A stretch of DNA of 64,000 nt from Fimbriosthenelais zetlandica (GCA_977030845.1 OZ365110.1:28520001-28584000); one strand, 5' to 3'; positions 13,271 through 19,639 are shown, counted from the first letter of the stretch. Notes: generated from the sequence alone by a model not told the origin. Made by a program: numbers and translations.

Positions 13271-14965
13271 CAACATCTATTAATATACAAAGTTGCATAT
13301 GTCTATTCATAATATTATGGCATGAAAATGAGTGATACAGGCAGCCTTTTCTCTGTTTGACCTTGAACTAATTGACCTTGACCTTTGCTGAAGGGAACAA
13401 ACATAGGTCACATACATTAAAATTGTCGGCTGAACATGTATCCATTAACATATAAAGTTTGAACACTCTATTCATAATACTTACTAAATTATGTTGGAAA
13501 ATATGGCAGATTTGGCCATTTTTAAAGGTTTGACCTTGAATTATGTGACCTTGACCTTTGCTGAAGGTCACAAACATAATTTAGTAAGTTTCGCTGAAGA
13601 TCCATCTACTAATATACAAAGTTAGAGAAATCTATTATCAATATTTTCTGAATTATGCAGGGGGAAAAGCGGATTTGGGCCGGTTTTCAAGTTTGACGTT
13701 GAATTATTTGACCTTGACCTTGAATTATTTGACCTTGACCTTGGATAAAGGTCACAAACACATAATTTAGAACGATTGGCTGATATTTCAACTTATAAAA
13801 AGCATTTTTTGTAATCTTTATCTACGTAATTTTCGGAAATATAGGGTCATTCCTGAGTTTTCTTCCAATTACATAATTTTTGAAATGGTTGTCATGGTTA
13901 CTGGCATAGTAACCATTGTGGTATCTAGCAACTAGAAATTTGATAAAGAGTGGGTCATCCTCTATGTTTCGAGTCATGTTTTTAGCACATAATTTTATTT
14001 AATTTTGTGCAGCCTTACCACATGTTTGGAAAACAGAAATTTTCCTTTCACAGCCGTTGTTACCATGGAAACCATACGAAAGGTATATGTATCACCATAG
14101 AAACTGTGTGAAATATAATGTAGATGGCACATGTCATGATTTGATTATAATTTCCAAACAGTGCAATGCAAACAGAAGTCGGTCAGGTTTGATCAATTGA
14201 TGGCCCCTACTTTCTTACAGTGTTACCGTTTGTCTAGCTGAGAGCCTATTTATTTCATTTCTCCTCAGGGAGAAATGAAATCAAGTTTTTCACCGCGTTT
14301 CTGTACACTATTATTATTCTTTTTATTATTATTATTATTGTTGTAGTTAGACAAATTTTCAATTGGCTTAAAATCGACTTTCTAATAGAGACAGGAATCT
14401 GGTCTTTGGCACACAGGTAGAGCATGGTCAGAAGATGTCAAATGTGGCAGGATTGACTTTCATGTCATGTCATGTCATGTCATAAAATGACGTCAAACTT
14501 GCATAACTGGAAAAATGTATTGGCTGTTTTTTTCAGAAATATTGCCAACCAAAAATCATGTCACTGGTATCAGGTAACATGTACTTGATGCCCTATCATT
14601 TGGTACCATCATTTGACCTGTGGCCTAATTACTGTCTGTTAATTAGCTAATTAACATGAAATGCAATCACTTAAATGCTATCTACTCCTAGCCTGGTTAT
14701 TCCAGGTGAATGAAAATTGCATTATGGACCCTTTAGAGGCTTCTTGTCATCATGATTAGTTTGATTTTTTAATTGACGTCATAATGACGTCATAATTGAC
14801 GTCTTAACGATGTCATGGCATCTTTGGGTAAAAAATGGAAAAAATGCTTCAAACATGTGAGGGACGGTCATATATGTCCAAATATAAAATATTGTGACTA
14901 TCCATATTTTAATAAGGGTGTTAATTAAAAAAAAAAAAAAAAATTTCAATATGGGAAAAAACAAA

Positions 14966-15046
14966 GCCAGCAGCAGGATTCGAACCCACACTTGCAACTA
15001 CCATTGGATCACAAGACCAACAGCTTATCCATTGGGCCATGGAGAC
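14966..15046 (-). pseudogene. tRNA-Ser-derived sequence, copy 1
   Basis: A box TGGCCCAATGG, B box GGTTCGAATCC, anticodon loop CTTGTGA, followed by a T-run; acceptor stem does not pair. Confidence 0.75.
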
Positions 15047-15738
15047 GGCACACATAAGCATGGCTTGTAGCCCAGTACCAATTGATCTGTATGTGATGCA
15101 TGAGTAGTAAGTAAGGGGTGGTTTGGTTCATGATATAGATTGTGAACTTTGACAGTCATTCAATTACTTGTGACTCCTATAAATTAATGGGAGTTGGGAA
15201 AGTTGGGGAAAATAAATCCTTAGATCTGGCTTGGACATTATTGGCCATAAATATCACAGATTACCATGGTTACTATTTTCAATTGGCTTAAAATCGACTT
15301 TCTACTAGAGACAGGATTCTGGTTTTGGGTACACAGGTAAGGCATGGTCAGAAGAGGTCAAATGTGGGAGGTTTGACTTTCATATCATGTCATGTCATGT
15401 CATAAAATGATGTAAAATCAGGCATTTAACTGGGCAAATGTATTGGCCGTTTTTTCATAAATCTGGCCTTCGAAAAATCATGTCACTGGTTATTCCAGGT
15501 GAATGGCAAGTTGCATTATGGACCCTTTAGAGGCTTCTTGTCATCATGATTTTTTAATTGACGTCATAATGACATCTTAATGATGTCATGGCATCTTTTG
15601 GTAAAAAGTGGATAAAAATGCTTCAAACATGTGAGGGATGGTCAGATAAGTCCAAATATAAAATATTGTGAAAATCCATATTTTATTAAGGGTGTTCATT
15701 AAAAATAAATTTTTAAAAAAAATATGGGAAAAAAACAA

Positions 15739-15820
15739 GCCAACAGCAGGATTCGAACCCACACTTGCAACCACCATTGGATCTCAAGACCAAGTCATTA
15801 TACCTCTAGGCTACAAGCCA
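15739..15820 (-). pseudogene. tRNA-Ser(TGA)-derived sequence, copy 2
   Basis: A-box-like TAGCCTAGAGG, TTGGTCTTGAGATCCAATGG anticodon arm, GGTTCGAATCCTGCTG, T7 run. Confidence 0.75.
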
Positions 15821-15834
15821 TGCTTGTTTGTGGA

Positions 15835-15916
15835 GTCTTGATGGCCGAGTGGTATTAGGTGTTGGTCTTGAGATCCAATGGTGGTTGCAAGTGTGTGTTC
15901 GAATCCTGCTGTTGGC
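15835..15916 (+). pseudogene. tRNA-Ser(TGA)-derived sequence, copy 3 (divergent from copy 2)
   Basis: GTCTTGATGGCCGAGTGGTATTAGGTGTTGGTCTTGAGATCCAATGGTGGTTGCAAGTGTGTGTTCGAATCCTGCTGTTGGC resembles eukaryotic tRNA-Ser(TGA) (TGGCCGAGTGG...GGCGATGGACTTGAAATCCATTGG...GTTCGAATCCTGC); T6 run follows. Confidence 0.8.
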
Positions 15917-16249
15917 TTGGTTTTTTCCCATATTTTTTTTTAATTTCTTTTTTAATTAACCCCCTCAATAAAATATGGATTGTCACAATGGATTGTCCAG
16001 GCAAATGACAAGGTGCATATATGGACTCTTTAGAGGCTTCTTGTCATCATGATGTTTTCAATTTTTTAATTGACGTCATAATTGACATCATAATGACGTC
16101 ATGGCATCTTTGGGTAAAAAATGGAAAAAATGCTTCACACATGTGAGGGATGGACAAATACATCCAAATATAAAATATTGTGACAATCCATATTTTATTA
16201 AGGGTGTTAATTAAAAACAAAAAATTTAAATTATCGGCAACAAAAAAAA

Positions 16250-16331
16250 GCCAACAGCAGGATTCGAACCCACACTTGCAACTACCATTGGATCTCAAGA
16301 CCAAGACCTTAACCCTCTGAGCCATGCTAGA
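16250..16331 (-). pseudogene. tRNA-Ser(TGA)-derived sequence, copy 4
   Basis: A box TGGCTCAGAGG, same anticodon arm and B box, T8 run. Confidence 0.75.
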
Positions 16332-17222: not shown

Positions 17223-17753
17223 GGCACACATAAGCATGGCTTGTAGCCCAGTACCAATTGATCTGTATGTGATGCATGAGTAGTAAGTCAGGGGTGGTTT
17301 GGCTCATGATATAGATTGTGAACTTTGACAGTCATTCAATGATTTGTGACTCCTATAAATTAATGGGAGTTGGGAAAGTTGGGGAAAATAAATCCTTAGA
17401 TCTGGCTTGGACATTATTGGCCATAAATATCACAGATTACCATGGTTACTATTTTCAATTGGCTTAAAATCGACTTTCTACTAGAGACAGGATTCTGGTT
17501 TTGGGTACACAGGTAAGGCATGGTCAGAAGAGGTCAAATGTGGGAGGTTTGATTTTCATCATGATTTTTTAATTGACGTCATAATGACATCTTAATGACA
17601 TCATGGCATCTTTTGGTAAAAAGTGGATAAAAATGCTTCAAACATGTGAGGGATGGTCAGATAAGTCCAAATATAAAATATTGTGAAAATCCATATTTTA
17701 TTAAGGGTGTTCATTAAAAATAAATTTTTTAAAAAAATATGGGGAAAAAACAA

Positions 17754-17835
17754 GCCAACAGCAGGATTCGAACCCACACTTGCAACCACCATTGGATCTC
17801 AAGACCAAGTCATTATACCTCTAGGCTACAAGCCA
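17754..17835 (-). pseudogene. tRNA-Ser(TGA)-derived sequence, copy 6 (duplicate of copy 2)
   Basis: Near-identical to 15739-15820. Confidence 0.75.
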
Positions 17836-17849
17836 TGCTTGTTTGTGGA

Positions 17850-17931
17850 GTCTTGATGGCCGAGTGGTATTAGGTGTTGCACTTGAGATCCAATGGTGGT
17901 TGCAAGTGTGTGTTCGAATCCTGCTGTTGGC
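17850..17931 (+). pseudogene. tRNA-Ser(TGA)-derived sequence, copy 7 (duplicate of copy 3)
   Basis: Near-identical to 15835-15916 with a GTTGCAC variant in the anticodon stem. Confidence 0.75.
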
Positions 17932-18264
17932 TTGGTTTTTTCCCATATTTTTTTTAAATTTTTTTTTTAATTAACCCCCTCAATAAAATATGGATTGTCA
18001 CAATGGATTGTCCAGGCAAATGACAAGGTGCATATATGGACTCTTTAGAGGCTTCTTGTCATCATGATGTTTTCAATTTTTTAATTGACGTCATAATTCA
18101 CATCATAATGATGTCATGGCATCTTTGGGTAAAAAATGGAAAAAATGCTTCACACATGTGAGGGATGGACAAATACATCCAAATATAAAATATTGTGACA
18201 ATCCATATTTTATTAAGGGTGTTAATTAAAAACAAAAAATTTAAATTATCGGCAACAAAAAAAA

Positions 18265-18346
18265 GCCAACAGCAGGATTCGAACCCACACTTGCAACTAC
18301 CATTGGATCTCAAGACCAAGACCTTAACCCTCTGAGCCATGCTAGA
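18265..18346 (-). pseudogene. tRNA-Ser(TGA)-derived sequence, copy 8 (duplicate of copy 4)
   Basis: Near-identical to 16250-16331. Confidence 0.75.
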
Positions 18347-19639
18347 CACATGCATGGCTTGTAGCCCACTGATCTATGGTGGATGAGAAGTAAGTCAGGG
18401 TGGTTTGGGCTCAAGATTTCAATTCCATATGGTTCCACTGGTTTTCCTACCCCCATTAACATGACCACAAGTGAAATGAAATATCTGTAATTGCAGCAAT
18501 TACATGATGACTAGTTTTAACTGATTTTCCTGTATCCATGACAACCAAATAAGATTTAACCAATAAAGTGGGGTATCATTTTAAAGTACTATTGGGTCCT
18601 CAGTTTTTGAGCACAAAAGTAAAAGTGTATTCCTATTTTTCACAATGTAATGGGGAAATATGTTACTGAAAAATAAGCGATTTTAGGCCCATTGTTAGGT
18701 TTGACCTTGGCCCAGATGACCTTGACCTCCATAAAAGGTCAAATGCCCTATATAGAAATTTTGCATATCGTCTCTAGTCAATGGGTTCCAAATTTGAAGA
18801 TCCTGCCTAAAATAGCTACAGAGATATGCAAACCTAAGTAAAATCACTTTGGATTTTTCAGATTTTATGTATGTTGCCATGGTAACCACCCAAAATATCG
18901 AATGCCAGAATGCCAACAAGCATTTTCAGAAAGCCCAGCCCATATACTCCATGTTAGTACTTGTTGGCAATCTCTACTCAAAATGTTTAGCGATTTCCAT
19001 TTCTAGGCCTCTTTTCTGATTCTGCTTCCTGACTATTAGCTTTACAGGTCGGGAAACGTCAATGTAGAATCTTGCGTTCCATATTTAACGGACTGCGCCG
19101 GTCCTAATAGCAATAAAAGTTTCTGATTATGGGGTAAAAATGTCTGAAAAAGCCGCCTAGATCGTCAAATTGAGCGGCCCGAATAGAATTCTTGAAGATA
19201 TTTGCGATTGTAAGTTACCCCGTTTTCTCTTGGACAATAGACATAGGAAGGACCTGTCGTATTATTATGAAAAAACGACCATCATGTACGTCTATTCTTG
19301 TTCTTTCAAATGCGGTAAAATAGAAGTTGATCAGATATGTTGGGACTGAGCAATGCCTCAAAACGTGAACACTACCAAATCAGTACTGTCAAGTCGCGAG
19401 CCAATTTTCACATGCCCAGCTGGGTGAGAATTTGAGCGGTGGATTGCACGCGTTACTAGAGTCCCTAACTTAGGCCACATCACCACAAATTATCTATCAG
19501 ATGATTAGGATATTGAAAGGCAATGCAGACAGATATATGTCTAAGGACTCTGATGAGGAAGTTTATTTGCAGCCTTGACGTTAAACTTAACCTATTTATA
19601 AGACTTACTGTACCATGTCACTGCACAACTACAAAGATA

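What the first reader, a model, noticed from the sequence alone, without database searches (positions are those of the whole stretch)
14252..18514. Rolling-circle (Helentron-type) element whose internal repeat unit is a tRNA-Ser-derived Pol III cassette
Seen: HINE-type ends (subTIRs, 5-prime inverted copy, microsatellite, 3-prime hairpin, CTAG, insertion in a T-run). Each unit has four copies of a module made of an 82-nt tRNA-like sequence with A box and B box, an immediate T6-T8 run, and a conserved AT-rich body with TGACGTCA repeats; there are 8 copies in total. Established: HINE/DINE-1/pearl elements carry central tandem repeats, and A box, B box plus oligo-T define a Pol III unit. Inference: a non-autonomous rolling-circle element has captured and multiplied a tRNA-Ser(TGA)-like Pol III transcription unit. 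It would spread small-RNA genes or TFIIIC sites by DNA rolling-circle transposition instead of retroposition, unlike an ordinary tRNA-derived SINE. The four copies per unit have different but recognisable A boxes, which could hint at retained promoter function.
Basis: partly seen in the sequence, partly recalled or inferred. Interest (0 to 1): 0.8.

Follow-up and report, generated by a model that had tools for sequence, protein, structure and literature searches.

The report
Rolling-circle transposon carrying tRNA relics
This stretch is a tandem pair of copies of a young, non-coding rolling-circle (Helentron-type) DNA transposon whose internal repeats are built around decayed tRNA genes. These relics still carry RNA polymerase III promoter and terminator signals, which has not been reported for this transposon type in the papers I could search.

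Summary
Window 14252-18514 holds one full unit (14252-16500) and one 5'-truncated unit (16501-18514) of a non-coding HINE-type element. It has a 5' subTIR hairpin, an (ATT)n microsatellite, a 3' subTIR, a palindrome and a CTAG end. A paralogous empty site at about 9887-9891 shows insertion into a T5 run, adding only two Ts.

The genome holds about 200 units at 98-100% identity, often in arrays. Each unit has four tRNA-like segments, eight in the window. Each has a near-consensus A box, a B box and a T6-T8 run. None passes Rfam's tRNA threshold or folds as a cloverleaf. The segments are confined to the element, so they are not independent SINEs.

New here: a diverged sister family of about 190 copies (5' hairpin ATTTCGTTTC...) carries one homologous tRNA relic at a fixed position. 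The relic therefore predates the window's family. Between the families the A box, B box and T-run persist, while the anticodon and acceptor pairing do not. Individual copies decay neutrally.

Pol III activity is untested because no RNA run was listed. The autonomous partner was not found. Unchecked first-reader notes on other parts of this genome describe similar HINE-like elements with tRNA arrays.

Verdict: new variant of a known kind.

The parts
14249..14251 (.). Left flank: three Ts of the target T-run
   Evidence: Empty arm has T5; filled site has T3 on the left and T4 on the right
14252..14281 (+). 5' subTIR (with the preceding T: TATTTCATTTC) plus complementary inverted repeat, forming a 13-bp hairpin
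   Evidence: DNA fold -12.3 kcal/mol, z = -7.1; 182 such sites in the genome, all with the same loop
14310..14339 (+). (ATT)n microsatellite of the left flank module
   Evidence: Read directly; its length varies between copies
14355..15274 (+). Internal monomer 1, complete, about 920 nt; homologous along its length to the single monomer of the sister family
   Evidence: Direct repeats D2, D7, D1, D11, D8 at 920-nt spacing; alignment A3
14965..15046 (-). tRNA-like module a: A box TGGCCCAATGG, exact B box, T6; anticodon UGU by one change
   Evidence: ARAGORN Thr-tgt; Rfam 23.2 bits
15275..15832 (+). Internal monomer 2, partial; lacks the 123-nt segment 14569-14691 and ends at the inversion junction
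15740..15822 (-). tRNA-like module b: A-box-like TAGCCTAGAGG, exact B box, T7
   Evidence: not called by ARAGORN
15833..15989 (+). Inverted segment holding tRNA-like module c at 15833-15915 (A box TGGCCGAGTGG, B box TGTTCGAATCC, T6) plus about 75 nt of AT-rich flank; head-to-head with b across a 32-nt spacer
   Evidence: Inverted repeats I2 and I5
15990..16440 (+). Internal monomer 3, partial
16248..16332 (-). tRNA-like module d: A box TGGCTCAGAGG, exact B box, T8; anticodon UGA
   Evidence: ARAGORN Ser-tga; Rfam 27.9 bits, below the gathering score of 29
16458..16500 (+). 3' end of unit 1: 3' subTIR GAAATGAAATA (16458-16468), palindrome (16472-16488), CTAG terminus (16497-16500)
   Evidence: 217 matches of the 31-mer with up to 2 mismatches in the genome
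16501..18514 (+). Unit 2: starts in the microsatellite (lacks unit positions 1-71) and lacks positions 1133-1286. tRNA-like modules at 17141-17222(-), 17755-17837(-), 17848-17930(+), 18263-18347(-). 3' subTIR 18473-18483, palindrome 18487-18503, CTAG 18511-18514
18515..18518 (.). Right flank: four Ts of the target T-run
9882..9895 (-). Paralogous empty site in the other arm of the inverted duplication (CCTA-TTTTT-AACTG)
   Evidence: Arms 9889-10639 and 13501-14251 are 99% complementary; sequence; the right flank aligns without mismatch

Best explanation
**What it is (shown).** The stretch is a head-to-tail dimer of a non-autonomous Helentron-type rolling-circle transposon (a HINE). The family is very young.

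**How it moves (inferred).** A Helentron Rep/helicase supplied in trans recognises the 5' subTIR hairpin and the 3' subTIR, palindrome and CTAG end. It inserts the element into T-runs.

**What it carries (shown).** The cargo is an array of 0.5-0.9-kb monomers. Each is built around a relic of a class-II, Ser(UGA)-like tRNA gene. The relic is an old, fixed component of this transposon lineage, because a diverged sister family has one at the same position. The window's family multiplied it to four per unit by tandem duplication and one inversion at a short palindrome.

**What the relics probably do (inferred, about even odds).** They have lost tRNA structure but keep the three signals of a type-2 Pol III unit: A box, B box and an immediate oligo-T. 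I judge they can still bind TFIIIC and give short Pol III transcripts of about 85-95 nt. If so, each transposition spreads Pol III/TFIIIC sites as DNA, without retroposition.
For: **HINE anatomy and mobility**
- The hairpin has z = -7.1.
- An empty site shows a T-run target with two added Ts.
- At least 30 full copies are 98-100% identical on 8 contigs. All 5' ends of independent insertions are preceded by TT, and the 13 recovered 3' ends are followed by TT.
- The genome holds 217 3' ends and 182 5' hairpins.
- No ORF exceeds 102 aa.
- The genome encodes intact Helitron-type Rep ORFs, with open frames up to 4260 aa, carrying DUF6570, Helitron_like_N and Rep domains.

**tRNA origin**
- ARAGORN and Rfam alignments show a long variable arm, a UGA anticodon and a T arm.

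**Confined to the element**
- The 27-mer gives 605 exact matches and 933 with up to 3 mismatches, against 217 3' ends.
- All 30 sampled sites lie inside copies.
- A generic anticodon-arm plus B-box pattern gives 824 hits. Every one of the 100 listed is of the family-1 or family-2 type.

**Old component**
- Family 2 has 192 5' hairpins, with the tRNA relic about 670 nt away in the same antisense orientation.

**Signals kept at lineage level**
- The B-box block is 16/16 identical in a background of about 64% identity.
- A-box positions differ 6/36 against 41/85 elsewhere in the 5' third, Fisher p = 0.001.
- T-runs are present in all versions.
Against: - No transcription or occupancy data exist. 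No RNA run was listed.
- No autonomous partner sharing the termini was found. None of the Rep hits on contigs C1, C10, C11 or C13 lies within 20 kb of a listed end. I could not read the other Rep loci.
- Copies show no constraint. Segregating sites are 0.051 per site both inside and outside the tRNA-like parts. Half of the single-mismatch variants of family 2 hit the B box.
- The B-box block is only the fourth longest of about ten conserved blocks between the families, so its conservation is not singular.
- The A-box test uses non-independent paralogues and an alignment that may anchor on those positions.
- The two added Ts could also be read as a 2-bp TT target duplication.
Confidence: 0.6

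Rival explanations
1. The structure is the same (a HINE with a tRNA relic in its monomers), but the relic is inert cargo. HINE central repeats can be any sequence. On this reading the A box, B box and T-run survive only because the families are not very old and the blocks happen to be among the slower-changing ones.
For: - Copy-level decay is neutral.
- About ten other blocks are conserved equally well or better between the two families, the longest being 21 nt.
- Oyster HINEs carry unrelated central repeats in different elements (PMC7492417).
- There is no expression evidence.
Against: - All three Pol III signals persist in six versions (a, b, c, d, family 2A, family 2B), while the anticodon, the acceptor pairing and much of the D arm changed.
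- A-box positions are spared within a region that is otherwise only 31-62% identical in the multiple alignment, or about 70% pairwise.
Confidence: 0.33
2. The tRNA-like modules are copies of a tRNA-derived SINE that retroposed into, or was swallowed by, the element.
For: A tRNA-derived head with A and B boxes is the hallmark of most SINEs. The genome has CR1-type LINEs according to another first-reader note.
Against: - A T6-T8 terminator follows the tRNA part at once, so a Pol III transcript could not include a SINE body.
- There are no flanking duplications or tails.
- Counts fit 3-4 per unit, and no free-standing copies appeared among the 30 sampled or 100 listed sites.
- The position is fixed in the sister family.
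Confidence: 0.03
3. It is a cluster of working tRNA-Ser/Thr genes that happens to be repeated.
For: ARAGORN calls four tRNAs in the window.
Against: - Rfam scores of 19-28 bits are all below the gathering score of 29.
- Acceptor stems do not pair.
- Minimum-free-energy folds are not cloverleaves, with z between -1.0 and +1.2.
- The segments occur only inside a transposon.
Confidence: 0.01
4. It is a cut-and-paste element (MITE or foldback type) that makes a 2-bp TT target duplication, not a rolling-circle element.
For: The filled site has exactly two more Ts than the empty site. No Rep-encoding partner with these ends was found.
Against: - The ends are asymmetric. The inverted repeat is terminal at the 5' side but 33-43 nt inside at the 3' side.
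- It has a 3' palindrome and a CTAG end, a 5' hairpin, a microsatellite and central repeats.
- It forms head-to-tail arrays that share 3' ends.
- This is the published HINE layout (PMC4067079).
Confidence: 0.04

Closest known systems
HINEs: non-autonomous Helentrons (DINE-1 of Drosophila, HINE-Mo of mites, Cg_HINE and pearl of oysters)
   Same: It shares the 11-13-bp subTIRs, the 5' inverted repeat, the microsatellite, central tandem repeats and a 3' palindrome. It also shares the T-rich/TT target with variable terminal Ts and no other duplication, the lack of coding capacity and the high copy number (PMC4067079, PMC7492417).
   Different: - Published central repeats are short satellite-like monomers of no known origin. 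Here the monomers are 0.5-0.9 kb and are built around a tRNA relic with Pol III signals.
- Neither paper mentions tRNA (0 occurrences).
- Whole units also form arrays joined from the 3' end to the microsatellite.
tRNA-derived SINEs
   Same: Both have a tRNA-derived segment that has lost tRNA function but keeps the internal A and B boxes and is spread in hundreds of copies.
   Different: - SINEs move through a Pol III transcript and a LINE reverse transcriptase, and have a body, a tail and target duplications.
- Here the relic is followed at once by a terminator. It moves as DNA inside a rolling-circle element and lies antisense to it.
tRNA-related, Pol III-type tandem repeats (Xenopus satellite 1, Hydromantes Hy/Pol III), as listed in PMC9659126
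   Same: Both are tandemly repeated units containing a tRNA-related region with Pol III promoter elements.
   Different: Those are satellite arrays thought to derive from SINE-like elements. Here the array is the cargo of a DNA transposon and is dispersed with it.
Gene and gene-fragment capture by Helitrons (own knowledge, e.g. maize and bat Helitrons)
   Same: In both, a rolling-circle element carries host-derived sequence and multiplies it.
   Different: - The captured pieces described are Pol II gene fragments or promoters, usually family-specific.
- Here a Pol III unit is kept across two diverged families at a fixed place.

Membership tests
HINE (non-autonomous Helentron) | Insertion into T-rich/TT sites, with terminal Ts and no other target duplication | tested here: met
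   The empty paralogue has T5 and the filled site has T3+T4. TT precedes every 5' end of an independent insertion and follows all 13 recovered 3' ends.
HINE (non-autonomous Helentron) | Subterminal inverted repeats of about 11-13 bp, a few nt from the 5' end and tens of nt from the 3' end | tested here: met
   TATTTCATTTC is at 14251-14261. Its complement is at 16458-16468, 32 nt before the 3' end.
HINE (non-autonomous Helentron) | Inverted repeat next to the 5' subTIR (DINE-1/Cg_HINE type) | tested here: met
   13-bp hairpin at 14252-14281, z = -7.1.
HINE (non-autonomous Helentron) | Short palindrome or stem-loop 8-35 nt from the 3' end | tested here: met
   GTAATTGC-A-GCAATTAC at 16472-16488, 12 nt from the end. 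The fold is weak on its own (z -1.4 and -2.1) but is invariant in 217 copies.
HINE (non-autonomous Helentron) | Microsatellite and central tandem repeats; no coding capacity | tested here: met
   (ATT)n at 14310-14339, monomers at 920-nt spacing, and a longest ORF of 102 aa. The monomers are much longer than those published.
HINE (non-autonomous Helentron) | Autonomous Helentron (Rep/helicase/endonuclease) sharing subTIRs and the 3' end | tested here: inconclusive
   There are 30 Helitron_like_N hits with open frames up to 4260 aa. None on C1, C10, C11 or C13 is near a listed end. The flanks of the others could not be fetched, and the endonuclease domain was not examined.
Functional tRNA gene | Scores above the curated tRNA threshold and folds as a cloverleaf with a paired acceptor stem | tested here: not met
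   Scores are 27.9, 23.2, 20.5 and 19 bits against a gathering score of 29. Minimum-free-energy folds are not cloverleaves, with z about 0.
Type-2 Pol III transcription unit | A box (TRGCNNAGTGG) and B box (GGTTCGANNCC) at tRNA-like spacing, followed by oligo-T | tested here: met
   A boxes match 8-9 of the 9 specified positions. B boxes are exact in 6 of 8 modules and have 1 mismatch in 2. T6-T8 follows within 3-4 nt. The consensus sequences are from my own knowledge.
Type-2 Pol III transcription unit | Actual transcription by Pol III or TFIIIC occupancy | not testable with these tools
   No RNA run was listed for the element or the module.
tRNA-derived SINE | tRNA head continuous with a body and LINE-type tail, own target duplications, and free-standing copies | tested here: not met
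   A terminator directly follows the tRNA part. Copies are confined to the element at 3-4 per unit.

The most novel reading that the evidence does not exclude
The Pol III/TFIIIC module is not passive cargo but a selected part of this Helentron lineage. It would be a DNA-transposon counterpart of a SINE head. By recruiting TFIIIC or Pol III it would help the element stay accessible or escape silencing. As a by-product it would seed the genome with hundreds of new tDNA-like sites (potential insulators or small-RNA genes) through rolling-circle transposition.
Probability: 0.25. Interest if true: 0.75.

Novelty: new variant of a known kind. Interest (0 to 1): 0.5.

Why it matters
HINEs are already known to spread satellite-like repeats. 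If they can also carry working Pol III promoter units, this would be a second, DNA-based route for dispersing TFIIIC/Pol III sites. SINE retroposition is the familiar route. Such sites can act as boundary elements and small-RNA genes.

The two families give a natural experiment: the same relic, about 200 recent units in one family and about 190 older copies in the other. This makes the question directly testable by ChIP or small-RNA sequencing in one species.

If the modules turn out to be inert, the finding is still a clear, datable example of host Pol III gene capture by a Helentron, and of how HINE central repeats arise.

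Tried and rejected
**Searches that found nothing**
- RNA evidence: two look-ups for sequencing runs listed no RNA run. Two plankton-metagenome DNA runs hold only short near-identical contigs of the element. These say nothing about expression.
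- Relatives elsewhere: two exact-pattern scans of metagenome contigs, using blocks conserved between the families, found nothing.
- Literature: searches for Helentron or Helitron together with tRNA, tRNA-like or Pol III found no report of a tRNA relic in a HINE.

I did not try to read them another way. The 3.5-kb loci around the Rep domains contain no subTIR.

**Rejected or uninformative**
- SINE origin, working tRNA genes and a TIR-type element were considered and rejected (see rivals).
- Copy-level selection test: segregating-site density is the same inside and outside the tRNA-like parts. The copies are too young for this to be informative.
- The weak SNORD46 hit (20.9 bits against a gathering score of 40) is treated as chance.
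- TGACGTCA repeats as a conserved functional motif: they are not conserved in the sister family.
- The 3' end of family 2 could not be fixed from the one locus that reaches it.

Full report
**What is in the window.** Positions 14252-18514 hold two head-to-tail units of one repeat.
- Unit 1 (14252-16500) is complete.
- Unit 2 (16501-18514) starts inside the microsatellite. It lacks the first 71 nt and about 154 internal nt.

The 5' end is ATTTCATTTCTCC-TCAG-GGAGAAATGAAAT. As single-stranded DNA it folds into a 13-bp hairpin (-12.3 kcal/mol, z = -7.1). An (ATT)n microsatellite follows. Near the 3' end lie the complement of the 5' repeat (GAAATGAAATA), a short palindrome (GTAATTGC-A-GCAATTAC) and the terminus CTAG. 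No ORF exceeds 102 aa.

**It is mobile, and its target is a T-run.** The element interrupts one arm of an inverted duplication whose arms are 99% complementary (9889-10639 against 13501-14251). The uninterrupted arm continues without a mismatch into the sequence that follows the element.
- The empty arm reads CCTA-TTTTT-AACTG.
- The filled site reads CCTA-TTT[element]TTTT-AACTG.
- So two Ts were added and nothing else was duplicated.

A whole-genome search found at least 30 full-length copies at 98-100% identity on eight contigs. Every 5' end of an independent insertion is preceded by TT, and each of the 13 recovered 3' ends is followed by TT. Whole-genome pattern counts give 217 3' ends and 182 5' hairpins, all with the same loop.

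Many copies stand in arrays:
- Later units begin at unit position about 78, that is CTAG joined to the microsatellite.
- Some are joined CTAG-TT-ATTTC.
- Some arrays start with two to five tandem 5' ends.

These features are the published definition of HINEs, the non-autonomous Helentrons (PMC4067079; PMC7492417). The genome also encodes intact Helitron-type Rep proteins, with open frames up to 4260 aa and DUF6570, Helitron_like_N and Rep domains. I could not link any of them to these ends. None of the Rep hits on C1, C10, C11 or C13 is near a listed end. The flanks of the others could not be fetched.

**The tRNA-like modules.** Each unit has four: three on the minus strand and one on the plus strand.
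- The window has eight B-box sites against 0.76 expected by chance.
- ARAGORN calls two per unit, Ser-tga and Thr-tgt.
- Rfam aligns them end to end with the tRNA model, including a long variable arm. Scores are only 27.9 and 23.2 bits, against a threshold of 29.
- Acceptor stems do not pair, and none folds as a cloverleaf (z from -1.0 to +1.2).
- Each has an A-box match at 8-9 of 9 specified positions. The B box is exact in 6 of 8, with one mismatch in 2. A T6-T8 run begins 3-4 nt after the acceptor end.

So these are decayed tRNA genes that still look like Pol III units. A SINE head would not be followed at once by a terminator.

**The modules belong to the element.**
- The 27-mer spanning the variable arm and T arm occurs 605 times exactly and 933 times with up to three mismatches. 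That is 3-4 per 3' end.
- All 30 sampled sites lie inside copies of the element.
- A looser pattern (3' strand of the anticodon stem, a gap, then the B box) gives 824 hits. All 100 listed are of two types only.

**A sister family shows the relic is old.** One young copy (locus L004) has inserted into a diverged relative, and L056 holds a more complete copy.
- This family 2 begins TT|ATTTCGTTTCCCC-GACA-GGGGGACGAAAT.
- It aligns with monomer 1 of the window's family along the whole monomer, at about 64% identity with gaps counted.
- It has a single tRNA-like segment in the same antisense position.
- The genome holds 192 of its 5' hairpins and 211 of its T-arm 29-mers. They are dispersed singly, about 670 nt apart within each copy, in several subfamilies.

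Its relic has these features:
- A canonical A box (TAGCTCAGTCGG or TAGCTCAGTTGG).
- A B-box block identical over 16 nt.
- T4 and T5 runs after the relic.
- A different anticodon loop and variable arm, and a poorer Rfam score of 20.5 bits.

So the tRNA piece entered the lineage before the two families split. The window's family then multiplied it to four per unit by tandem duplication. One inversion has its junction at a short palindrome just upstream of the tRNA-like 5' end.

**Is there constraint?**

At the level of copies, none:
- Segregating sites are 0.051 per site both inside and outside the tRNA-like parts (26 units).
- Among the 12 single-mismatch variants of the family-2 T arm, 6 hit the B box.

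At the level of lineages the picture differs:
- Among the four paralogues the 3' two-thirds is 93-98% identical. The 5' third is only 31-62% identical in the multiple alignment, or about 70% pairwise. The block just upstream is identical between modules a and d.
- Within that fast-changing 5' third, the specified A-box positions differ in 6 of 36 comparisons. Other positions differ in 41 of 85 (Fisher p = 0.001).
- That test has limits. The comparisons are not independent, and an aligner tends to anchor on such positions.
- The B-box block is one of about ten conserved blocks between the families and is the fourth longest.
- Taken together this is suggestive, not proof, that the Pol III signals matter to the lineage.
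- From memory, the different 5' thirds resemble the D arms of different tRNA isotypes (Ser-like in c, Arg-like in a, Lys/Phe-like in family 2). I could not test this here.

**What is not supported.**
- The TGACGTCA repeats are strongly enriched in the element (11 of the window's 13) but are not kept in family 2.
- Nothing shows transcription. No RNA run was listed. The two plankton-metagenome DNA runs hold only short, near-identical contigs of the element.

**Comparison with what is known.**
- In structure the element passes every HINE test I could run. The autonomous partner remains open.
- It differs from published HINEs in the length and nature of its central repeat. Neither key paper mentions tRNA, and four literature searches found no report of a tRNA relic in a Helitron or Helentron.
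- tRNA-related tandem repeats of Pol III type are known as satellites (PMC9659126), but not as cargo of a DNA transposon.
- I therefore rate it a new variant of a known kind.

**Earlier notes of this scan.**
- Unchecked first-reader notes describe similar elements on other pieces of this genome (s1-207679, s1-210712, s1-196156). I could not inspect those stretches.

**Verdict.** Interest is moderate (0.5).

Noticed in passing
window 9380-19035 (arms 9889-10639 / 13501-14251, continuing 9380-9888 / 18515-19035): There is a large inverted duplication whose arms are 99% complementary. Its centre (about 11100-13280) is full of 21-bp tandem repeats. The HINE dimer sits in only one arm, so the insertion is younger than the duplication.
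   Followed up: partly
L056:~150-1005 and L004 (both sides of the young copy); genome-wide about 190 copies: A sister HINE-like family has the 5' hairpin ATTTCGTTTCCCC-GACA-GGGGGACGAAAT and a single tRNA relic. It has at least four subfamilies that differ in the A-box region and in the B box (GGTTCGAATCC or GGTTCAAATCC). Its 3' end was not resolved.
   Followed up: partly
L005, L009, L012, L017, L020, L023, L026-L028; G000:C1:49889453-49889756: Two to five tandem copies of the 5' end (hairpin plus about 40-50 nt, period 64-94 nt) stand at the head of many copies or arrays. Arrays reach at least 6-7 units (for example C1:13347336-13363314).
   Followed up: no
L061-L072 and other places: There are thirty Helitron_like_N hits. 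Many lie in very long uninterrupted frames of 2200-4260 aa with DUF6570 and Rep domains, several of them on small contigs (C30, C31, C40). This suggests recently active autonomous rolling-circle elements.
   Followed up: partly
window 15196-15281 and 17372-17457 (+): A weak match to the snoRNA family SNORD46 (20.9 bits against a threshold of 40) lies in the unique tail of monomer 1. It is probably chance.
   Followed up: no
window 16331-16353 with 16318-16332 (and equivalents upstream of each module): A short inverted repeat (AGCCATGC ... GCATGGCT) links the block just upstream of each tRNA relic with the relic's own 5' end. The b/c inversion junction lies at this palindrome, and the fast-changing 5' third starts here.
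   Followed up: partly
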